NCBI GenBank assembly: GCA_002104945.1
Contig: MCFH01000004.1
Coordinates: 992,001-1,056,000, forward strand
Direction: 5' to 3'
Length of the DNA stretch: 64,000 nucleotides
Source of the DNA: Piromyces finnis finn
Taxonomy: Eukaryota; Fungi; Neocallimastigomycota
Shown: piece after piece, positions 2,758 through 24,459 of the stretch
Layout of the letters: each line of letters begins with the position of its first letter
Numbering within the stretch: position 1 is the stretch's first letter
Position numbers and translations under genes: made by a program
Notes under the pieces: generated by a model
Database searches by the model: none
What the model was told of the DNA's origin: nothing
The model's input: only the letters and a program-made list of their open reading frames with translations

Positions 2758-3364
2758 TTTCTTTAGTGATTAATGCAATTATATATGGATTTCATTGGTA
2801 TAATAAACATATTCAAAAGTATATATTTTATATTCAATATTTTATTATTTTAAGGTAATACATAAACAAAATAGATATAATAAAAATATATATATATAAT
2901 TAATGTTTTGTTTTTAAAAAACATAAATCATTAAAAAAAATATCAATAATATCCATATTTAAAGAAATTCACCAAATTTCATTCTAATCATAAATGGATT
3001 ATCATTTATTTAAAAAATAAAAATTCTAATTTCATTTATTATTTATTTCATTTTACTAATTTTATACAAAAAATCTTTTTTTTTTTTTTTTTTAACAATC
3101 TATTATTATAATAAACATTTATTGAATAATATTATTGATAATTGATATTTAATATTTAATATTGATTTTTCTATTATAAAATATATATTAATATTAAATT
3201 TTAATTTAAAAATAAAATTAAATATATATATATATATATAATTATTTATATTTCATCTTTTACAGTTATATAAATTCTTTACATGTATAAAACATATAAA
3301 TATTTATAACATTTAAATCTCAAAAAAGTTTACCTTTTCAAAATTTTACAATTTAAAACTATTG

Positions 3365-3366
<2 letters not shown>

Positions 3367-3415
<49 letters not shown>

Positions 3416-3947
3416 TTCCGAGTGCATTTCTCCCATCGATCAGAGTTAGCTCCAATGGTGGTTCTTAGAGAAACGTTGGCTCATTCCTATTGCTAGGTGG
3501 TTGTGACCCTCCTGGTCTGTCATACTGTTTCTTCAGCTTCGACGCTCACTTAATCCATGTACATTAGATGCATGTCGTTGTACGATATTTCACAACTACA
3601 ATGCTAAGCCTCTTATAGTCAATTTGATCACGTGTCAACCGCCCCCTAATGTTTACACTTAAATTGATTAAGGAATATTATGTGTTTTTGGCATAGCCTA
3701 AGTCACCACTTATTAAGTTCTAATTTGGAATGTACCATGTACACTAGACCCTCTCAGGCCGGCTAGACGAGTGTTATTATCATAGTAGTAAATTAGAAAG
3801 TTCATTTATACTTACCTGAATATCATAACCCAACCCATGGCAAACCCAGTGGGAAAATCCACAGGCACTGACATCTGCGGGGTCGAACCAGAAGCCTTAT
3901 GTATGCTAAGGAAACGCCTTAACAACCAGGATAAAAACTGGAACGAC
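3367..3947 (-). mobile_element. tRNA-head SINE-like retroposon (element A), ~535-nt body plus poly(A)
   Basis: GC-richer island in AT-rich DNA. T47 at 3366-3412 is a poly(A) tail on the minus strand. A 13-bp direct repeat TAAAACTATTGCT flanks it (3354-3366 and 3948-3960). The head contains a B-box-like GGTTCGACCCC and is 61/69 identical to 9396-9464. Confidence 0.85.
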
Positions 3948-4626
3948 TAAAACTATTGCTTATTAAGAAAATTATTGAAAAAAGAAAATTTTTTAAATTT
4001 TTTTTTTTTTTTAATACACTTTTTAATAAAATTTTAATCAAATAATTTTAAAGATTTCATTACATATAAAAGTTTTGTATACATTTTAAAAGGTATGAAA
4101 ATAAAGATTTCCTTATTTAACTAGTTTATTAATTAATAAATATAGATGATGCATCGTATCCTTATCTATATTTATATAAAAAGAATTACAATTGTTTTCA
4201 ATAAAAGAAAGTATGATTTATCTACACACTACAATAAAAAAAATAAGTTTATTTTTTTTTTCATAATTATTAATATATTTTTTGTTTTATTTTAATTCAT
4301 TTTATTTTATTTTTCTATTTATTTTTTGTATTTGTTTTTTTGTTTTTTGTATAGAATAATAACAGTATAATATTAATATTTGAGTATTATTAAATACGTC
4401 CATGGATTGATCTTAAATTTTTCAATACTGTTATTAATTAAACAAAATAAAAATAAATAAATAAATAAAATAGAGAGCTTCTTGAAATATTAAGATATGT
4501 TTAAATTATATTATTGTGTGATTTGAAATCTAATTTTTTACATGATATATGTAGAATCAAAAATAGTTTGTATATTTCTTTATAAAAATAAACATAGAAT
4601 AAAATTGTTAAAACTCAACAAGTATA

Positions 4627-4658
<32 letters not shown>

Positions 4659-4958
4659 GTTATATTATTTGCTTTGTTTTTGTTTTCTATTCAATCACCT
4701 GCGTATTATATAATTATTGGTAAATTTCTTTTTTATTTTTTAATTTTTACTTTTTTTTTTTTTTATTATTATTATTATAATGAACTTTTTTTGTTTTTGC
4801 TTTTGTTTTTATTTTTAATTTGAGTTTTATTTGTAATTAAATGATATCATCTCCAATAAAAATCTATTATCTTTGTTGTTGTTAGTATGATTTTGTGGTA
4901 TATATTCATTAAAGTTTTTTCAAAATTTACCGTTCCATTATATCAATTAACAATACAG

Positions 4959-6041
4959 TTAATTACTAGAACCATGAATATCATGAATAGATTCTATGGT
5001 GATATTTTCAATACTATTAGATTTAAATTGAACTGCGCTTTTAATATTTGATATATTAGCATTTATACTAGCAATATCATGACGAGAATTACTCTTTACA
5101 ATTCCACTACCACTGTAATTTGAAATCGTATCTCTTACTGGTTCAAATGTTGATTGAGCAGGTTGTATAGGTGAAATACCTTGACTATTAACAATTGAAT
5201 TTGAATTTTTGTAATTTTTAGAATCTGCGCTTGTATACGAATCTATACTTTTATTGGAATATTCATCTTTATTTACTTTTCCTATTGAAGGTGGTAAAGC
5301 AGGTAGCATTGTTGGTGATTGAGTTAAAGGATTACCAAGACTTATATTTTGATTTATACTTGAAGCAGATGACATACTTATATTGTTACTAGATGCATAA
5401 CTACTTCTATTTAAAAATTGTGGTATATTGTTATCACTGTTATTGCTTAGCAAACTTGTTAATGAATGATGTTTATATATTTTAGTACCAAAGGTAGGTA
5501 ATAAATATTTATCTTTTTTTGTTACTTCTTCTATAAATGGTTGAACATCTACTATGTTATTTAATGATGGATTTAAATTAAGATTTGATATATTATCTAT
5601 CGATGTATCGGATAACACAGAATTTCTCTTATAAATTTTTTCTTCCTCAGTTAAATAATCATCTTCTTCATCACTATTTTTATTAAGTTTCTGTGAGTTT
5701 ACCTTTTTTTGATGTTCTTTATTCATTTCATAAAGCAATGTTACTTCATTTGCAGGACTTCCTGATTCAATATCTTTAATATTATCAGCAGTATCAAACT
5801 TTTGAATATTTGATATATTTACACCATCTGTGATATTACCTGGTGCAAGTACATTTTGATCTATAATTAAATTTTGCATATAAACAATAAAAATTAATAT
5901 TGACAAATGAAAACTTTATAAATATATAAAATATTTTAATCTATGATAATTTTGTAAATATAACTTTTTGAAATTATTAAAATACAGATAGAATTAGATT
6001 TCCAAAATTATTAAAATTCCTATCGTATTTTTACATTACAT

Positions 6042-6075
<34 letters not shown>

Positions 6076-7143
6076 ATCAATTATTTAAAGACTTACCATA
6101 GGCAATAGGTAAAGAATCATGATCATAATAAAATGGATCATCAAAATAATTTATTATAATTCCCCACCATGATCCTCCTAATTGTGGATTTTTTACAGCC
6201 CAATGATATATAACCCAAGCCATTGACGAGAAAATGAAAGCACACAAAACATCAATACTATAGTGATATGAAGACATAATTAATGTAAACATACCCACAA
6301 CATTAAAAATTGTAACTATAATATTAATCCATGTTTGTTTACAATAATACCAATATTCCATAATAATTAATGTAAACATAATTGTGTGACCACTATTAAA
6401 AAAAATATTTATTAGATAATTAATAAAATGGAATTTTTAAAATATATATATATTTATATGTATATATTTTGAAAGTATTAACTATCTTTTTCTTTTCTTT
6501 ATACATAATCAAATAACTATTTCTTTTTTTTTTTAATTTCTTATTAATTTCTATTTTTGGGTTTTATCTCTTACCTAAAGAATACGTCACCACATGCTAC
6601 ACGAAGTTGCAATTCTAATAAAAGTGCATCTAAAAATATATTATCATCATCTTTATAAGTTTTTTCACATGCAACCCATGGAGTAGGTAATACTGTCAAT
6701 GGAATAAAACAAGCACGTAATAGATATACAAATCCCATAACTAACAAAATTCTTCTAGCCACCGTAAATGAGTATTCTTTTAATGTAATTGCTCTTATAA
6801 TAATAAATGCACTTGTTGTACGAACCATTAAATCGGCAATATCTCTAGGTATCCATTCATTTTCAAGATAAAATTTATGAGCAAATTCCAATATTATATC
6901 TGGTGCTACATAATCATTATTATTACCATTAATAACGTTGGTATTGGTTCTATCCGCATATGAATTTGCTAAACAAACAACATATGTACAAAAGAAAAAC
7001 CAGATAGCTGCATATAATGTAAATACTATATCTCTATTATTTCTATATATTATCAAATATGGTTTTATCTTTTTAAACAGTGTTTTTTTATTATCATTTA
7101 TAATAAGCGTATCAGATACTTTTTCTACTGTTTCCTGTTCCAT
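4959..7143 (-). CDS. Sphingomyelin synthase family (SMS/PAP2-like) choline/inositol/ethanolamine phosphotransferase with a long Ser/Asn-rich C-terminal tail
   Basis: Three exons (7143-6575, 6392-6098, 5860-4959) joined in frame by GT-AG introns. They rebuild the SMS motifs CGDVFFSGHT and HYSIDV, with several hydrophobic TM segments and an upstream TVLPTP...C motif. Confidence 0.85.
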
Positions 7144-8971
7144 TTTAAAGAAATTCTATTTTTCTACTCAAAAAAAGATATTTCTTTTTTTTTTTTTTTT
7201 TTTTTTTTGAAAAAATGTTTTACTTATTTAAATATAAAAATATATAAATATGTTTGTTTTTTTTTAATATACAAATTATTTGTATTTAAGAAATAACTTT
7301 TAAATAATATTAAACTTGATATATATCTTAAAATACAATATTATAATAAATACAAAGAATTTAATATATGAAATAGTTAAGATATAATGTATATATAAAA
7401 TTTAATTTGTTTAAATATTTTAATTGATTATATGTTTTCTTTTGATATGTTACAATATATTATATATTTAAAGATATAATATTTTTATAGGTTATACTCT
7501 ATATTTCAAAAAAAAAAAAAAAAAGAAATTTGGATATAAATATATTAATATGTTATTTTTAAATCAATGTTTAGAAACTTACTATCTTACTATTATATAT
7601 ATATATTTTTTGAGATATTTTGATAATTTTATAATCCTTTAATATTACATATATTTAATCAATATAAAAATATTTATTTATTTTTTAGTTTAGTTTATAA
7701 GATAGTCTTCTTTCTTTATTACATATAATTGAATTTTTTTCTTCATATAGTTTTTTTTTTTTTTTAATTATTACTTTCTCAAAATTTTACTGTTTTTTTT
7801 TTTGTTTTTTATGATTTAGTAAGTTGATTTGCGTAATAAATAAAACAAAAAAAAAAAAAAAAAGATAACACAGTTTTTGATTATATATATATTTCAATTT
7901 TCCGTTATTTTTGTTTTTCTATTTGCATTTAATGATTAGATATTACTTAAACTTGTTGGTTATCTAATTAAAAAAATAGAGAACTATTTTTATTGTATCA
8001 AATATTTCAAAATTCTTATTTATTATTTAAACTATTTTTCATTATAGAATGGTACTTTTTTTTTTTTTAATTTTAATATTTATATTTGTTTTTCAAATGA
8101 AGCGTTATATTACACACTAATAATTTTATATTGGTATAAAAGATATGTTTTTTTTTATTATCACTTTTTTTTTTTTTTTAGTATTTTTATATTTTTTAAT
8201 CTCTTTTATTTTTTTCTATTAATTTTAAAATAATAAAAAAAAAATCTTTTAAAAGAAATCTATTATTTTTTTTTCAAAAAAAAAGGAAAAAAAAAAAGTT
8301 GCGTAAAACTTTAATAAAATATAAACAAAAAATATTTGTTATTTGTGACTAAAAGTTAAATTTTCATATTCCACAATAAAACAATAGCTACAAAATAAAA
8401 ATAGCTAATCCTATTTGACTTATATAAAAAAAATATTCTACAGCATTTGTAACCTATAGAATGATGGTAGAATTACAAATAAGAATGGTAAAACAATTCT
8501 GGGGGATAATAAAATGTATTACGATGAATTTTTATCTTTTTTGAATATCTTACATACTATTATGCATATTATATCATAGGAATATAATTCTTATTGAAAT
8601 ATAAATTAACATATGAAACAAATAAAGGTGTTGATGAGTTACAAAATTATAACTATTAAAGTTTATCTATATAATATATTATGTTTTTATTCCAATATAT
8701 TACATTAATTATTTAAATAAATCTTTTAAAAAAATCACCATCATGTACATTTTTGATATTGAATTATATATTTCAATATAATAAATATATAATAAATAAA
8801 ATTATTATAATCATAGTTGATTATAATATATTATTAATATATTATTTAACTAAAATGTTATTTTTTTGTTTTTTTTTCCTATTGGTTGTTTTTTCATCAT
8901 TTAAAAGTTTAAAAATTATTTACTTTTTGAATAAATAAATAAAAAAGTGACAACTTTATCTGCGATGGAAT

Positions 8972-9941
8972 AAAGTTTGGTTAAAAGCTTGTGTTTAGGG
9001 GTAAACAGACTTAATGAATTTAAATAATATTTTATAAAATAATCATAATTCTTTTGTTTTTTAAGCTTATTTATTTAATAAATGAATAAGCTGTAAAAGA
9101 ATAAATTTTATTATATTATTTAAAGGTCATTAAATAATAAAAATTTTTTTTAATTTTTATTTAACTCTTGGGAGGGTCTGAGAAAAACCCGCAAAGTGTC
9201 CTTGAGGGACTTCGTATTAACAAATTCATAATTTATTATGAATGTATACGAGTGGATCACCAGAAAGCGAAAAATTGGAATAGGATCTACGGGTGTAATG
9301 CTGGAAGTTCAATACGCAAGACATTTAATAATTTTTTATTATTAAATGAAACTCAATTCAGACTACTCTTTGACCAAATTTTTTCAAAAAAGAAAGTCGT
9401 TCCAGTTTCTATCCTGGTTGTTAAGACCCCCGCTTAGCATTCATAAGGCTTCTGGTTCGACCCCCGCCATTGACAGTTCTTTAGCGATTTTCCTGTTTCA
9501 GGTTTGCGCTTAAAGTATAGGGGTTAAAGGTCAATTCAGGTAAGTATAACTATACCACCGGACTCTACCCTAAGCAGTTAATTCAGATTGGTAGTTTTCT
9601 CCGTATCAAGCGGTTTTCCCACTGAAGTTTAGAGTATATGTAGGAAGGGGTATCAATTAATTCACAGATTACTAACTATGATCTTTGAGGGTTGTTCTCA
9701 TCGTTAATCATCCTTCGCCAATAAAGGTTCAGGAGATCACTGGTGTTGGTAGCTCGGTCTTTGTGTGATAGGATCGTTAAGAGCAATAAGCCATTCCATA
9801 TTAGCCCTGCCCAGAGGGATGATTGTGCCGACGTCGTTCTGATATGGCAATGTACAATAATGTACAATCACATACCATATATAACTCAGGGGGTTAGATG
9901 AGGATATATGGAAGTCTAAAAAAAAAAAAAAAAAAAAAAAA
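8972..9941 (+). mobile_element. Composite SINE-like retroposon (element B): ~424-nt 5' extension, then tRNA-like head at 9396, body and poly(A)
   Basis: Poly(A) at 9918-9942. A 14-bp direct repeat ATCTGCGATGGAAT lies at 8958-8971 and 9942-9955. The head at 9396-9464 matches element A, with B-box GGTTCGACCC at 9454. Confidence 0.8.
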
Positions 9942-11851
9942 ATCTGCGATGGAATGGTGATGGTTGTTGAATAGCATCCTTATTAAGAATGAAAATAGTA
10001 GAAAAAAAGGTAGAAAACATCAGTATAATAAAAATATGATGTTAATACTAAGTAATTATTAAAATGATAAAGATAGAATTAAGCATTGTCCTACACTCTA
10101 ATGCCATCATTTAGATGTAACTTTAATATGCCAATAATGGACTGTCATCCATAGGATTTAAATAATGATAGAAAAAAGTATAATTCATTGCAGGAATAAA
10201 CAAAAAAAAAATTAAACTTTGAAACAAATGAAATATAAAATTCTAATTTATTTTAATTTTAATAGTACTATCTTTATTTTCTCTTTCAATATTTCATTCA
10301 CCTTCCTTCCACTTTAAGCAGCTGTCATTTATTACGAATTTACCTTTCCAGTTGAAATTTAACAATATAAAAAACTTTATGTTGTATGCCAACCTTATTA
10401 TTTTTATTGTGTTAAATTACAAGTTATGATTTCTATTGGTCAAAGTTTAGAAATGTATACATTACTTTATACACCGATGCAACATAAAAAATTTTAATTT
10501 AAAGTTGACGATCACCACGGAATATTCGATTTAATTCCATTTTTATAATTTTTAATTTAATAAAAAAAAGGGAATGATAATATTTTTAATTAAATTTTTT
10601 GGGTATTTTTTAAAATTAGTTAAAAGAGATATTTAGTAGAATAAAGTATATTATTTTATAATACCTATCTTTTTAGCTTCTTCATACAGTATGATAGTTA
10701 ATACTCTTTTTTATCTATTATTACTTATAAAATGGTTTATACCCTTGCAAATCTTGATGTAAGATGATTCAAACAAAGGATATTTAAACCAATGACTATA
10801 AACTATTTTTTATCTTAATTTATATTATATTAAAGCATAATATATAAAACAATACTTTTTTTTTTTTTTTAATTTATTTTAATTGCTTAAAAGAAAAAAA
10901 TTATTAATTAAAATTTATTATTAAAAACCCATATCACCACCACATCTGTAAAATAAAATATTATTTGAAAGGGTAAAAGGATGCAGAAAAATAAAAAAGA
11001 TCTAATATAATAATAACAATAAATAGAATAATAATAATAATAATGATAATTAGAATAATAATAATAATAATAATAATTGTACTATTTTAACTATTTTTAT
11101 TTTTAATAAAATAATTAATGACTTGTTAGGCATAAATATTATTGTATCATAGAAAATGCTATAATAAATAAATGCAACTAATCAAATCAAAGATGATCAA
11201 AGAATTATATTAACAAGAATATTCCATAAATTAATATTTAAATATTCTTATAAATGATATCTTTAACATAATATTTAAATATATTTAAATATAAAAAAAA
11301 AAACACATACACACAAAAATATGTAATGGTTTGCTAGTTTTGAGTTATTGTTGTTGCTGTTGTTGTTGCTGTTGTTTCCTATATAAGCATTCCTATTATT
11401 TTAAATTTATTTTTTGTAAAAAAAAAAAAAAGTTGTATTGATGGCTATAGAAAATAAAAAAAAAAAGTTCATTCTTTTTTTTTCTTTTCTTTTTTTAAAT
11501 TTGTAAGATTGAGTCTTTAATTAATTTATATGGAATAGAATAATGCTTTATTTATCTTTTATATAACCCACCCACCATAAATATATTTTTGCAATCCAAA
11601 AAGTTTAAAGCTTTTACCCATTGAAATATGTAACAAAATATATATAAAAAAATATAGCATTAAAAATATATAAATAACTTTTATAAAATGTTACTTTTAT
11701 TAACCTGAATTAATGGTTTTTTTTTTTCTATTCTGAAAATTAGATTTATTTATGAATTTTAATACATAAATTATGGTTGACGTTTTAAACTATAATATTA
11801 GAATATGTCAAGTCATGTATTATTATTTGATTTGATATTACTAATAATAGT

Positions 11852-19800: not shown

Positions 19801-20144
19801 TATTTAATATTGAAAAAAAAAAGTTTAAATCATAAATGAAAATAATATTAATAATAGTATTACCTCTACGATTACATATTAAAAGAGTTGAATCTTTTCT
19901 ATGAATTTTTTTTTTTTTTTTTTTTGAAGGCATCAACTATTTTTAAACTTTATTAATTTAATTAAAATTATAATGCATATAATACATGTTTTAAAAAAAT
20001 AAAATTAAAAATGAAAAATAAAAATTAAAAAAAAAATAGGTTTAAATAAACACAAATGAATAAAAATTGGGTATAATGTATTCTAGTCATTTTTAGCTAA
20101 AAGTAAGAAAGCCACTATTATACTAAAGTATAATAATTGTATTT

Positions 20145-21000
20145 GACTTCTAATGAGACACTGCCGGAGGACACCGAGCCAAAGATCAAAATTTTGTCAT
20201 GGGAGCAAAATTATGATCTCCATTGGTTTACTCTGGCCCCTCCTGGCCTGTTTTACTGTTTCTTCAGCATTGACGCTCTTGGTTGTTGCTTCAAACCTTT
20301 TGAACATGGACCATTGCTGACCAATAACAAAAGATATGATTTTGGTTAGAAATTCCGCTGCTATCGTCAAAAATGGTATTCCTTCGACAATGGCAGATTG
20401 AATCTGACACTTGCAAAGTTCTTTTCATTCCCTTGAATTGGAATTGATATATTCTTAAAAACTTCTTCCCCAAAGAAGGAATTTAAATATTTTATTGTAC
20501 ACACCAGAATAATCATACACATAAATATTCATCGGAGTATTAGAACTATTACTACTATTAACTAAAATACTATCTAAATTTGAATGATTATCTTCACCAT
20601 TGTTATCATTACTATTATTACTTCTACTACTACTATTAATATTATTACTATTGGTACTATTACTATTGCTACTATAACTATTGTTACTATTACTACTATT
20701 ATTGTTATTGCTATCTCTACGGATAATAACATTTTCATTCACATTGATAGGACCGTTGAAATTACGTTGATTAAAAAAAAAAAAATTTAATAGTTGAACG
20801 ATACCATCGTAATGTTTAATTACGGATATCTCTAAATGTTGGACAATCTAATAACCAATATTTCATACTTTGAACACTACTCTTGCCACATGGACAGTCG
20901 TTAGGACGAACAAACTGGAGCAATAAATTTAGCAACTTTTGCAACTCTAGCATCTAACTTGTATACTAGGAATAAATTCCTCCAACGGTTTTGTCATTTC
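20145..21000 (-). mobile_element. Degenerate 3' fragment of a non-LTR retrotransposon (LINE ORF2 C-terminal zinc finger plus 3' UTR)
   Basis: The minus strand reads, with frameshifts and stops, YKLDARVAKVAKFIAPV / PNDCPCGKSSVQSMKYWLLDCPTFRDIR (20822-20896). This resembles the CCHC-type C-terminal finger of LINE ORF2, with His replaced by Tyr. A GC-richer 3' segment shares 36/41 nt with the tail of element A and ends in GAAGTC. No clear TSD or poly(A). Confidence 0.65.
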
Positions 21001-21784: not shown

Positions 21785-24459
21785 TTAGTTGCTGGTTTCG
21801 GTTTCTGGAACATTAGCACTAACAACATTTTCCATTAATTTGTTTAATCTTCTAATGATAGTTCTTGGATCTTGTAATAAACCAGCAGAAATTAAAGCAT
21901 TATCGTATACTTGACGCATAACTTCAGAAGCAACTTCTGGCTTAGTAGTACGTAACTTGTATAATCCACAAATAACACGGTGACTAGTGTTGATTTCTAT
22001 TTTTTGTGGTGGAATTGGCATACCAGTTAACTTAGAACCTGGCATCATCATCATTAACTTTCTACTTATAGAAGCATCATGATCACGTAAGATAGCTGGA
22101 GTAGATGCAATACGGTTGTTAACAGTAACTTGAGAAACAAGTTCCTTACCTAAAGTTTCCTTAACCCATTCAATCATTTCCTTTTCTTCGGTTTCATTTA
22201 ACTTGGAAGCAGCATTTTCAACCTTACTCTTCTTAGCAATTTCTTCAGCAGCAGCTTGAGATTCAATGTTAAGAATTCTCTTACCCTTATATAAATGAAG
22301 ATTGTTCATAACAAATTCATCAATGGCTTCATGGCATAAAACAACTTCAATATCATTGTTCTTGAATGGTTCATAGTATGGAGAATCTTCAACAATACTA
22401 CGGTTTGGAGTGCAAGTGTAGAAAATACATTCTTGATCCTTTTGCATCTTTTCAACGTATTCATCAAATGAAGTAACTTCTCCCTTACCAGTCTTAGTAC
22501 TTGGGAATCTTAAAAGAGCAGCAATATCAGTCTTGAAACCGTAATCAGCACAAATACCTTCCTTTAAGAAGTTACCAAAGTTACTGGCGAATAATTTGTA
22601 CTTTTCTGGATCACGCTTAGATTCATCTAATAACCACTTAATAACACGAGTAGTTAAAACATTTCTAAGTCTAGCAATTAAGGCATTATCTTGAAGCATT
22701 TCACGAGAAACATTTAATGGGATATCTTCACTATCAACAACACCACGAACAAAACGAAGCCATTCTGGTAATAATTGCTTACATTTTGCTTGGATTAAAA
22801 CCTTTCTGGAGTAAAGACTAACACCTGGTTGCATACGACCTAAACCCATAGTTTCAGAGTGGTATTGTGGAACGTATAATAAACTAGAAATCTATTTTAT
22901 TTATAATAAAATAATAATGTTTAAAATATGTAAGATTAAAAAAAATAATCATTTTGGTTTATTTGGAAAATTATAAAAATAATTTTTTAAATAATTTATA
23001 ATTAACATTTTATATTATCTATAAACATACTTGAATTGGAGCATCAGTTTTGTATAATAAAGTGAATTGTGGTTTATCATGAGCATTAGCAATGAATCTG
23101 TAGAATTCAATGTGTTGGTCTTCGGTAATTTCATTCTTATTCATAGTCCATAAAGCTTGAATAGTATTAAGTCTCTTACCGTTTAAAACAATTGGATATT
23201 GAACAAAGTTTGAGTAACGCTTAATAATTCTTTGTACATTTTGGATATCAGCAAATTGTTTACAATCTTCACGTAAGTGAATAACAATCTTGGTACCACA
23301 AGTGACACCATCAGCTTCAGCAACATCATAGGAACCAGAACCATCAGATGTCCAGCAGTATCCCTTAGCATTCTTGTGAGCTGATTTAGTATAAACTTCA
23401 ACCTTTTCAGCAACCATTAAACAAGAGTAAAAACCAACACCAAATTGACCAATAATATTTTCCTTAGCACTAGCACTACTTTGGTCAAGCTTCTTTAAGA
23501 AAGCTAAAGTACCAGAATTAGCAATAGTACCCAAGTTATTATTAACTTCATCTTCATTCATACCAATACCGAAATCTTGGAAAATAATAGTTCTATCACT
23601 CTTGTTTATACTAAGATGGATTTCAGCTGGATTAGCAGCAACAGTTTCATCAAGAACAGTTTCATCGGTTAATTGAAGGTATCTTTTTATTCATGACAAT
23701 CAATTATATTAATTATATTAATACATGAAATTTAGCATTGATTATTATCGTATCTTTATTATTAACTTACCTGACTTTTTCTAAAGCATCACTTGCGTTG
23801 GAAATAAGTTCTCTAATGAAAACTTCCTTGTCAGAATATAAACTTTTAGCTACAATATCAAGTAAACGCTTAGTTTCAGTCTTAAATTCATGCTTAGTAG
23901 CAGTACCAATAGTTTTTTCATTAACAGAAATATTTCCTTCTTCTGGAATTTTATCTTCTTCTTCCTTATTCTATTACAAAATATTAAGAATGTTTATTAA
24001 ATATATTAATATAAAATTAATATATATCTTTTATTTAAAATTTCAATAAAAAAATATATTAAATTTATATAAATTCTTACTTCAGAATTTTCAGTAACAA
24101 GGAATCTTCTAGAAGTCTTGGAAACGCTAGCAGCTCTGTAGTTCTTCTACATAAAATTTAAAATTTACAAAAATGTTTATTTAATAATATTCTATTTTTT
24201 ATATAATTTCAATTCCTTTTAATTTATTCTTGAATTTTTTATTCCTTTTAATACAATCTTGTTATTATTTTCATATCTCTTTTTCATAATATTTGATTAT
24301 TTTATTTATTAACTAATTCTTTCTCTATTTATTTAAAAATCTTTTTTTTTTTTAAGGACTTACAAGAGACTTTAAAGAAACTCTTTCTAATTGTTGAAGA
24401 GAAGAAAGGCTTAAAGTGGCAGCTTTTGGTAAAGCGATTTTTGTAATTTGAGATAACAT
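21785..24459 (-). CDS. TRAP1: TRAP1 / mitochondrial-type Hsp90 (Hsp75), with N-terminal presequence-like segment
   Basis: [67 protein letters not shown]...LPEWLRF and LNVSREMLQ are present; there is no C-terminal MEEVD. The first exon [32 protein letters not shown] is rich in Ser/Leu/basic residues. Confidence 0.92.

What the first reader, a model, noticed from the sequence alone, without database searches (positions are those of the whole stretch)
3354..9955. Candidate new modular SINE family: shared tRNA-like head, different bodies and tails
Seen: elements A (3367-3947, -) and B (head 9396, +) share a 69-nt head at 61/69 identity (GTCGTTCCAG...TGGTTGTTAAG...GGTTCGACCCC). The head contains a stem with a 7-nt loop (CCTTA-GCATACA-TAAGG in A). 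Looser similarity continues to about +140, after which the ~400-nt bodies look unrelated by eye. Both end in GGAAGT(T/CT) plus poly(A), and each has its own perfect TSD (13 and 14 bp). Established: tRNA head + Pol III B-box + poly(A) + TSD is the SINE blueprint, and few fungal SINEs are described. Inference: a recently active SINE family whose subfamilies swapped bodies or tails, in an early-diverging fungus.
Basis: partly seen in the sequence, partly recalled or inferred. Interest (0 to 1): 0.8.

Follow-up and report, generated by a model that had tools for sequence, protein, structure and literature searches.

The report
Two fungal SINE families, one head
Two young, non-coding "hitch-hiker" retroposons of the gut fungus Piromyces finnis share one front end but have unrelated middles; this is an ordinary SINE design not yet described for this fungal group, and one copy here was pasted in fused to a copy of the RNase P RNA gene.

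Summary
Elements A (3413-3947, minus strand) and B (9396-9917, plus strand) share a 69-nt head (61/69) and an invariant 16-mer at about +130. After that 16-mer their bodies are no more alike than shuffled sequence.

Both are real, dispersed retroposons with poly(A) tails, 12-16 bp target-site duplications (TSDs) and 5'-truncated copies. The genome holds about 232 heads, 284 A tails and about 40 B copies. The 40 A copies that were scored are 100% identical.

A's tail derives from the C-terminal coding end of a resident L1-like LINE. A B-like relative sits in a Pecoramyces-like metagenome contig.

The correction: B's 14-bp TSD does not flank B alone. It encloses 8972-9942, which is a 154-nt leader, nuclear RNase P RNA, a 21-nt trailer, B and its poly(A). 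The parent RNase P gene (99% identical, without B) lies on another contig. This copy is therefore a chimeric retrocopy, most likely made by reverse-transcriptase template switching.

The head's tRNA origin is plausible: the B box is perfect and a tRNA-Ala-like loop lies at canonical spacing. Rfam and ARAGORN do not support it, however.

The scan has already met this family, and the shared-head idea, on other windows of this genome (s1-185427, s1-185523). I found no paper describing it.

The parts
3354..3366 (.). TSD of element A, copy after the poly(A) (AGCAATAGTTTTA)
   Evidence: identical to 3948-3960
3367..3412 (-). poly(A) tail of A (46 A)
3413..3947 (-). SINE A, 535 nt, full length, non-coding (longest ATG-ORF 37 codons), 42% GC in a 20% GC window
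   Evidence: (40 of 40 scored genomic copies 100% identical)
3879..3947 (-). shared head of A (69 nt) with weak A-box-like TATCCTGGTTG, TTAGCAT loop and perfect B box GGTTCGACCCC
3806..3821 (-). invariant 16-mer ATTCAGGTAAGTATAA (perfect 5' splice-site / U1-complementary motif), last shared block of A and B
3413..3547 (-). LINE-derived tail of A. A 401-450 is 85-88% identical to the C-terminal coding end of LINE ORF2 (SVNAEETVRQ...). It is roughly colinear with the LINE as far as GGAAGT.
3948..3960 (.). TSD of element A, copy before the head
8958..8971 (.). TSD of the chimeric retrocopy, 5' copy (ATCTGCGATGGAAT)
8972..9125 (+). 154-nt 5' leader of the RNase P RNA precursor. Homology to the parent locus starts exactly at the TSD border.
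9126..9374 (+). nuclear RNase P RNA (retrocopy), Rfam RF00009, 72 bits, E 1.7e-19
9375..9395 (+). 3' trailer of the RNase P precursor (about 17 nt matching the parent) plus about 4 extra purines (GAAA) at the junction with B
9396..9917 (+). SINE B, 522 nt, full length, non-coding. Head 9396-9464, 16-mer 9534-9549.
9918..9942 (+). poly(A) tail of B (25 A; the last A is ambiguous with the TSD)
9943..9955 (.). TSD of the chimeric retrocopy, 3' copy
19930..20960 (-). 5'-truncated, diverged 3' end of the resident L1-like LINE: CCHC end of ORF2, then a 3' UTR with AATAAA and poly(A). It contains the segment homologous to A's tail (20238-20278).

Best explanation
A and B are two families of one SINE superfamily of the anaerobic gut fungus Piromyces finnis.

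Each family is a roughly 0.5-kb non-coding RNA gene copy built from four parts:
- a shared 69-nt head that carries a perfect B box and a weak A box, probably a decayed tRNA (tRNA-Ala-like) acting as an internal Pol III promoter;
- a loosely conserved spacer ending in an invariant U1-complementary 16-mer;
- a family-specific body;
- a tail ending in GGAAGTY plus a templated poly(A). In A this tail derives from the 3' coding end of an L1-like (APE+RT) LINE.

The resident LINE's endonuclease and reverse transcriptase copy the RNA into T|A-rich sites by target-primed reverse transcription. This leaves 12-16 bp TSDs, long A tails and frequent 5' truncation.

In this window the reverse transcriptase finished a B RNA and then continued on a 3'-extended RNase P RNA precursor, by template switching or on a pre-ligated RNA. 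The result is one insertion, leader-RNase P-trailer-B-poly(A), inside a single TSD. The same kind of jump is the likeliest source of the module shuffling between A and B.

Shown: anatomy, copy numbers, TSDs, truncations, LINE homology of A's tail, the chimera and its parent gene.
Inferred: Pol III transcription, tRNA origin, template switching, the partner LINE lineage.
For: - Copy number and youth: 232 heads, 284 A tails, 230 16-mers, controls 0. All 40 scored A copies are 100% identical over 533 nt. About 43 B candidates exist, 23 of them at 97-100%.
- Retroposition marks: 27 of 32 A copies and 15 of 17 B copies had TSDs by script, and nearly all of the rest by eye (two of those are imperfect). 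Median TSD is 13 and 14 bp; median poly(A) is 35 and 21.
- 5' truncation: 30 of 99 listed A tails lack a head, and B has truncated copies.
- Target site: the base before the TSD is T in 37 of 42 copies, against about 67% expected (p 0.0014).
- Old copies exist: A at 87% and about 68%, B at 71-89%.
- Non-coding, with no AATAAA or ATTAAA in the last 60 nt, whereas the LINE has AATAAA before its tail.
- LINE link: A 401-450 matches the ORF2 C-terminus. LINE relatives carry Exo_endo_phos + RVT_1, and the best solved match is human L1 ORF2p.
- Chimera: the TSD sits at 8958-8971 and 9942-9955. RNase P RNA is called at 72 bits. Only two RNase P loci exist in the genome. The other one, C189, is 99% identical from exactly the TSD border to 4 nt before B's head, and has neither B nor a poly(A).
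- Other genus: contig L095 has a B-like element (head 87%, body 64% against 59% shuffled, 12-mer core of the box intact). It is directly preceded by a 5S rRNA (106.9 bits) and a 16-nt purine linker. Its Snf7 gene clusters with Pecoramyces ruminantium.
- In P. finnis, three of the five 5S copies found lie 8.5 kb apart on one contig, which looks like an rDNA-type repeat.
Against: - No covariance-model or ARAGORN support for a tRNA in any of three heads. The acceptor, D and anticodon stems do not pair, and no covariation was seen.
- A has a T5 run at +11-15, which could hinder Pol III.
- The scarcity of T runs is explained by the elements' own base composition and is not an independent signal.
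- A perfect 5' splice site is an odd feature for a Pol III RNA.
- No LINE whose terminal sequence equals the A or B tail was found. The LINE family I could read continues about 230 nt past GGAAGTC.
- No LINE homology was found for B's body or tail.
A LINE-leader origin of the head is therefore excluded only indirectly.
Confidence: 0.8

Rival explanations
1. A and B are not Pol III SINEs. They are Pol II-transcribed, internally deleted derivatives of two LINE lineages. The shared head plus splice-donor box is the LINE's own leader exon, and the bodies are lineage-specific leader or UTR remnants.
For: - The 16-mer is a perfect 5' splice site conserved across genera.
- A's tail is LINE-derived.
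- Unchecked notes from this scan say the LINE leader has an intron-like stretch with a donor (s1-185467, s1-177041, s1-174044).
- tRNA models do not recognise the head.
Against: - The exact 16-mer occurs 230 times and the head 232 times. In the listed part at most about 3 of 100 16-mers lie outside SINE copies. The LINE 3' end, by contrast, has more than 1000 first-look candidates.
- By coordinates, none of about 18 LINE 3' ends on the listed contigs has a head or a 16-mer 4-7 kb upstream.
- There is no polyadenylation hexamer before the SINE tails, unlike the LINE.
- The B box matches 9 of 9 specified positions, at tRNA-like spacing from the TTAGCAT loop.
Confidence: 0.12
2. The RNase P::B unit arose by read-through (5' transduction). 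A transcript started at the RNase P promoter of a source locus that had a B copy just downstream, and the whole RNA was retroposed. No template switch was involved.
For: - The unit starts at a plausible transcription start, about 30 nt downstream of a TATA-like run in the parent.
- It includes the trailer, so the RNase P part is a 3'-extended precursor that runs past the T run.
Against: - Only two RNase P loci exist in the assembly, and the parent has no B downstream.
- B's complete 5' end sits exactly at the junction, with about 4 extra purines, as in template-switch chimeras.
- A second fusion of a small Pol III RNA (5S) to the same SINE 5' end is seen in another genus.
Confidence: 0.15
3. 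The chimera was made at the RNA level. An RNA ligase joined the RNase P precursor to B RNA before reverse transcription, as RtcB does for human U6/L1 chimeras.
For: The architecture is the same as U6/L1 chimeras, for which ligation before retrotransposition was shown (PMC6789731). The junction is sharp.
Against: - The 3' end of the RNase P part is an extended precursor followed by extra purines. It is not a processed end of the kind RtcB uses.
- No data here separate this reading from template switching.
Confidence: 0.1
4. A and B are unrelated SINE families that captured the same tRNA gene independently. The shared head would then be convergent and not a shared module.
For: Only the first 69 nt are strongly similar.
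Against: - Both share the same non-tRNA features: a 7-nt expansion in the 5' half, the same decayed stems, and above all the identical 16-mer about 60-70 nt past the head.
- The Pecoramyces-like element has the same layout.
Confidence: 0.03

Closest known systems
tRNA-derived, poly(A)-tailed SINEs mobilised by L1-type LINEs (for example rodent B2/ID, plant SINEs, and the fungal SINEs Foxy and MgSINE; from my own knowledge)
   Same: Short non-coding element, internal B box, poly(A) tail, variable TSDs of 12-16 bp at T|A-rich sites, 5' truncation, and dependence on an APE+RT LINE.
   Different: - At 520-535 nt it is at the long end for SINEs.
- The head is too decayed to be recognised as a tRNA by Rfam or ARAGORN.
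- It carries a perfectly U1-complementary 16-mer.
- The host is a Neocallimastigomycete, a group for which I found no SINE paper.
Modular SINE superfamilies with shared domains and exchangeable LINE-derived tails (CORE-, V- and Deu-SINEs; mollusc 'jigsaw' SINEs, PMC4758252)
   Same: One module (head plus short conserved box) is combined with different bodies and tails, and a tail is taken from a LINE's 3' end.
   Different: - The conserved non-head block here is only 12-16 nt and looks like a splice donor. It is not a 60-100-nt central domain.
- Only two families were seen in this genome, plus one B-like relative elsewhere.
Chimeric retrogenes made during LINE reverse transcription (human U6/L1, PMC4476161; Magnaporthe grisea WEIRD/MGL chimeras, PMC2104539; the RtcB ligation route, PMC6789731)
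   Same: A complete small-RNA copy is fused in the same orientation to the 5' end of a poly(A) retroelement. One TSD surrounds the whole unit, none lies at the junction, and the parent gene is elsewhere.
   Different: - The 5' partner is a leader- and trailer-bearing RNase P RNA precursor (and a 5S rRNA in the Pecoramyces-like contig).
- The 3' partner is a full-length SINE, not a LINE 3' end.

Membership tests
SINE (non-autonomous, LINE-dependent retroposon) | Short, non-coding, dispersed in many copies | tested here: met
   535 and 522 nt. Longest ATG-ORFs are 37 and 25 codons. 232 heads and 284 A tails on many contigs.
SINE (non-autonomous, LINE-dependent retroposon) | Marks of target-primed reverse transcription: TSDs, 3' A tail, 5' truncations | tested here: met
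   TSD medians 13 and 14 bp; poly(A) 11-60 in A and 4-49 in B; 5'-truncated copies
SINE (non-autonomous, LINE-dependent retroposon) | 3' part shared with a partner LINE, or a poly(A) tail used by an L1-type LINE | tested here: met
   A 401-450 matches the ORF2 C-terminal coding end of an APE+RT LINE, and the two are roughly colinear as far as GGAAGT. For B only the poly(A) and GGAAGTC are shared. The exact partner lineage was not identified.
SINE (non-autonomous, LINE-dependent retroposon) | Internal Pol III promoter in a head derived from a small RNA gene | tested here: inconclusive
   - The B box GGTTCGACCCC matches 9 of 9 specified positions of GGTTCGANNCC.
- The A-box-like TATCCTGGTTG matches 6 of 9.
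- The spacing of about 44 nt is tRNA-like.
- No Rfam family matches at E up to 10.
SINE (non-autonomous, LINE-dependent retroposon) | Transcribed by RNA polymerase III | not testable with these tools
   Needs small-RNA-seq, 5' RACE, or Pol III ChIP or inhibitor data.
tRNA(Ala-AGC)-derived SINE head | Recognisable cloverleaf or significant similarity to the genome's tRNA-Ala genes | tested here: inconclusive
   - For: a TTAGCAT loop (U33, AGC, A37) lies exactly 14 nt before G53 of GGTTCGA.
- Against: the stems do not pair. ARAGORN calls Ala(agc) for B only at 60% of its threshold, and Leu for A at 70%. There is no Rfam hit.
- No tRNA-Ala gene of this genome could be fetched for alignment.
Internally deleted LINE (head = LINE leader) | 5' end homologous to the 5' end of the autonomous LINE | tested here: inconclusive
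   - No full-length LINE could be read.
- Indirectly against: the head and the 16-mer have SINE-like copy numbers, and neither lies upstream of about 18 LINE 3' ends.
Template-switch type chimeric retrogene (U6/L1-like) | Two unrelated transcripts fused head-to-tail in the same orientation, poly(A) only at the 3' end, a single TSD around both, and the parent gene elsewhere | tested here: met

The most novel reading that the evidence does not exclude
The invariant U1-complementary box at the end of the shared module may be a working element and not a relic. It could be a mobile splice donor or U1-binding site through which the SINE head is joined to the acceptor in LINE leaders or to host exons. 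Alternatively it could be the preferred switch point at which new SINE families and small-RNA retrogenes (RNase P, 5S) are assembled. If so, this fungus would run a splice- or switch-coupled SINE/LINE system.
Probability: 0.1. Interest if true: 0.75.

Novelty: new member of a known kind. Interest (0 to 1): 0.45.

Why it matters
- It documents a currently active SINE/LINE pair in Neocallimastigomycota. The genomes of this group are being mined for biomass-degrading enzymes, and I found no published description of their SINEs.
- Near-identical copies with long A tails promise insertion polymorphisms that could serve as strain markers, and they are a source of new splice donors in genes.
- The RNase P::SINE retrocopy is a natural record of the RNase P precursor. 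It shows a 154-nt leader, read-through past a T run, and reverse-transcriptase template jumping in an early-diverging fungus.
- The retrocopy may also be a second, retroposed RNase P RNA gene.

Tried and rejected
- **Rfam:** scans of the region and of three heads alone at E up to 10 gave no small-RNA family for the head; the region scan found only the neighbouring RNase P RNA.
- **ARAGORN:** nothing in the window or in 60 loci, so there is no sign of tRNA-gene targeting. With relaxed thresholds the calls for A and B disagree.
- **RNAalifold on six head-module sequences:** no cloverleaf and no compensatory pairs.
- **T-run depletion as a Pol III signal:** rejected, because it is explained by the elements' own base composition.
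- **tblastn of 171 LINE-related proteins against A and B:** only A 402-452 matches; nothing significant for B.
- **Metagenome scans:** a 28-mer head pattern gave 0 hits. An 18-mer gave 29 hits, of which only L095 is related; L083 and the others are chance or bacterial.
- **LINE contigs found through distant proteins (L112-L114):** these belong to other organisms and share nothing with the SINEs.
- **Full-length LINE copies of this genome:** The look-up of the P. finnis protein P0001 is withheld for the window's own genome. I did not try to read those stretches by other means.
- **5S::SINE chimeras in P. finnis:** none among the 5S copies found.
- **The claim in earlier notes that the LINE leader carries the identical 16-mer:** my genome-wide count leaves room for at most a few such LINE copies.


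Full report
**1. What is in the window**

Read on the minus strand, 3947-3413 is a 535-nt element, A. It starts GTCGTTCCAG and ends GGAAGTT. It is followed by 46 A and flanked by a perfect 13-bp duplication, AGCAATAGTTTTA, at 3948-3960 and 3354-3366.

On the plus strand, 9396-9917 is a 522-nt element, B. It has the same start, ends GGAAGTCT, and is followed by 25 A.

The window is 19.8% GC. Both elements are 42% GC. Both are non-coding, with longest ATG-ORFs of 37 and 25 codons.

**2. The A-B relation**

| Segment | Identity A vs B | Shuffled control |
|---|---|---|
| First 69 nt | 61/69 | not run |
| From nt 70 to the box | 59% | mean 53%, max 61% |
| 16-mer ATTCAGGTAAGTATAA | 16/16 | not run |
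| After the 16-mer | 58.5% | mean 57.8%, max 59.5% |

The bodies are therefore unrelated. Small patches recur near the tails: GCCAACGTTTCTCTAAGA in A against GCCGACGTCGTTCTGATA in B, and GGAAGTY in both.

**3. It is a real, active family**

- The 23-mer spanning the B box occurs 232 times in the 56.5-Mb genome. A's last 29 nt occur 284 times and the exact 16-mer 230 times. Reversed control patterns occur 0 times.
- All 40 scored A copies are 100% identical over 533 nt.
- B has about 43 candidates, 23 of them at 97-100%.
- In 49 copies with flanks, TSDs were found by script in 42, and by eye in nearly all the rest (two of those are imperfect). The medians are 13 bp for A and 14 bp for B. Poly(A) runs 11-60 nt in A and 4-49 nt in B. 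Extra nucleotides at the 5' junction number 0-3.
- The base before the TSD is T in 37 of 42 copies (p 0.0014 against composition). This T|A preference resembles that of the L1 endonuclease.
- In the listed part of the genome, 30 of 99 A tails have no head, which indicates 5' truncation. B also has copies truncated at 41-64 nt.
- Older copies exist: A at 87% (L006 406-606, with its own TSD) and about 68% (L020 505-1020); B at 85-89% and 71-77%. The lineage is old and the present burst is recent.

**4. The LINE link**

A 401-450 is 85-88% identical to a segment of a 1-kb repeat that is also present in the window (19930-20960, minus strand).

In a better-preserved copy (L021) that segment is the last roughly 30 codons of a long ORF. 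The ORF ends with a CCHC motif, a low-complexity stretch and ...SVNAEETVRQARRAS.... The corresponding stretch of A reads SVEAEETV*, with a stop codon.

HMMER relatives of this ORF include 1351- and 1512-aa proteins with Exo_endo_phos and RVT_1 domains. A closer 936-aa relative matches human L1 ORF2p best among solved structures, at E 2e-30 against 1e-18 for R2. The closest protein is a GenBank entry of Piromyces finnis.

A's tail stays roughly colinear with the LINE as far as GGAAGT. There A's poly(A) begins, while this LINE lineage continues for about 230 nt to an AATAAA and its own tail. The exact partner lineage therefore remains open.

For B I found no LINE homology. An earlier agent of this scan reports that B carries the hairpin of another LINE lineage (s1-185427). 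I could not test that.

**5. The correction: B here is half of a chimera**

No duplication flanks B's head. The sequence after B's poly(A), ATCTGCGATGGAAT, recurs once in the window, at 8958-8971.

Between that site and B lie:
- a 154-nt leader;
- a nuclear RNase P RNA at 9126-9374 (Rfam RF00009, 72 bits, E 1.7e-19);
- 21 nt of trailer and linker.

The genome has only one other RNase P locus, C189:736681-737105. It is 99% identical to the window from exactly the TSD border (8972) to about 9391, with four differences. It has no B and no poly(A), and its flanks are unrelated on both sides.

So 8972-9942 is one retroposed unit: pre-RNase P RNA (leader, mature RNA and about 17 nt of trailer), about 4 extra purines, a full-length B, and poly(A).

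This is the architecture of the U6/L1 and Magnaporthe chimeric retrogenes (PMC4476161, PMC2104539). Template switching at the 5' end of the B RNA is the simplest mechanism. Ligation at the RNA level (PMC6789731) or read-through from a lost source locus cannot be excluded.

**6. A relative in another genus, again behind a small RNA**

One metagenome contig (L095, Ga0138317_1043819) carries a B-like element. Its head is 87% identical to B's, its body 64% against 59% for shuffled sequence, and the 12-nt core AGGTAAGTATAA is intact.

Its Snf7 gene clusters at 90% or more with a Pecoramyces ruminantium protein.

The head is directly preceded by a complete 5S rRNA (Rfam 106.9 bits) and a 16-nt purine-rich linker.

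P. finnis has the identical 5S sequence. Three of the five copies found lie 8.5 kb apart on one contig, which looks like an rDNA-type repeat, and none lies next to a SINE. The Pecoramyces-like 5S is therefore probably a second chimera. Its 3' end is not resolvable, so this is suggestive only.

**7. Origin and transcription of the head**

For a tRNA origin:
- The B box GGTTCGACCCC matches all nine specified positions of the consensus.
- A TTAGCAT loop (U33, anticodon AGC, A37) lies exactly 14 nt before G53.
- A weak A-box-like motif lies about 44 nt upstream of the B box.

Against:
- Rfam finds nothing at E up to 10 for three heads.
- ARAGORN finds nothing at 80% or more of its threshold. Below that it gives Leu for A and Ala for B.
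- The stems do not pair, and there is no covariation.

I rate a tRNA-Ala origin at about 0.6. Pol III transcription is inferred from the B box and from the lack of a polyadenylation hexamer before the templated A tail. The low number of T runs is no argument, because it follows from the elements' base composition.

**8. The 16-mer**

It is the exact complement of the 5' end of U1 snRNA, from my own knowledge of the U1 sequence. It is the last block that A and B share, and its 12-nt core is kept across genera while its flanks diverge.

I saw no spliced copies. Head-to-tail distances in A are 464-471 nt apart from three indel variants. The one deleted B copy (L029) does not use this site.

Earlier first-reader notes say the LINE leader carries the same motif. 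My count shows that nearly all 230 exact copies lie inside SINEs, and that no head or 16-mer lies 4-7 kb upstream of about 18 LINE 3' ends. An identical motif in many LINEs is therefore not supported. Its function is open.

**9. Limits**

As a result no full-length LINE, no tRNA-Ala gene, and none of the orphan or tandem heads could be read. Dfam, Repbase and SINEBase are not available here. Paper searches found no description of SINEs in anaerobic fungi.

**10. Verdict**

This is a genuine, young SINE superfamily with two families sharing one head module: an ordinary mechanism in a group where it is undescribed. The scan has already reported the family and the shared-head design on other windows of this genome (s1-185427, s1-185523, s1-173572).

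New here:
- the RNase P::SINE-B chimeric retrocopy, with its parent gene;
- the Pecoramyces-like relative behind a 5S rRNA;
- the genome-wide counts that tie the 16-mer to the SINEs.

Noticed in passing
window 19930-20960 (-), next to 21785-23561 (-): A diverged (about 85%), 5'-truncated 3' end of the L1-like LINE, with AATAAA and a poly(A). It lies just downstream of an Hsp90-family gene (Pfam HSP90, E 3e-78). The LINE 3' end has more than 1000 first-look candidates in the genome.
   Followed up: partly
window 9126-9374 and leader 8972-9125: The RNase P RNA has T8 and T5 runs in its P3 region and a T6 run in the retro-copied leader. The precursor that was copied also ran past the T run after the mature 3' end. 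This is odd for a Pol III transcript. The 154-nt leader recalls the promoter-bearing leader of yeast RPR1 (from my own knowledge).
   Followed up: no
G000 C150:542372-542614 (-): Three SINE heads in tandem, 110 bp apart, with a single 16-mer after the last one. This could be a head-monomer array or a minisatellite. The sequence could not be fetched.
   Followed up: no
G000 C1:2077038, C39:28411, C52:14312, C79:532955, C101:596743: A-type heads with the 16-mer at the A spacing, but with no A tail within 600 nt and no B body. They could be 3'-truncated copies, a third family, or elements with another tail.
   Followed up: no
L095 640-1294 (-) and 25-654 (+): In the Pecoramyces-like contig the SINE has no poly(A). 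Its antisense 3' part abuts or overlaps the stop codon of a Snf7/ESCRT-III gene. This may be exonisation or an assembly join.
   Followed up: no
G000 C153:5379, 13913, 22447 (-): 5S rRNA copies spaced 8,534 bp apart, probably inside the rDNA repeat. They are 100% identical to the 5S of the Pecoramyces-like contig.
   Followed up: no
L029 1398-1575 (-); G000 C152:600741-600938: A B copy with an internal deletion that joins position 78 to 419, and an A copy inserted into a B fragment (nested insertions).
   Followed up: no
L063 2159-3370 (-), L042 3-1154 (+): Copia-type RT (RVT_2) and retroviral-type integrase ORFs lie within 1-2 kb of SINE copies. The top RVT_1 hits in the genome are long (1300-1550 aa) LTR-element-like ORFs.
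   Followed up: no
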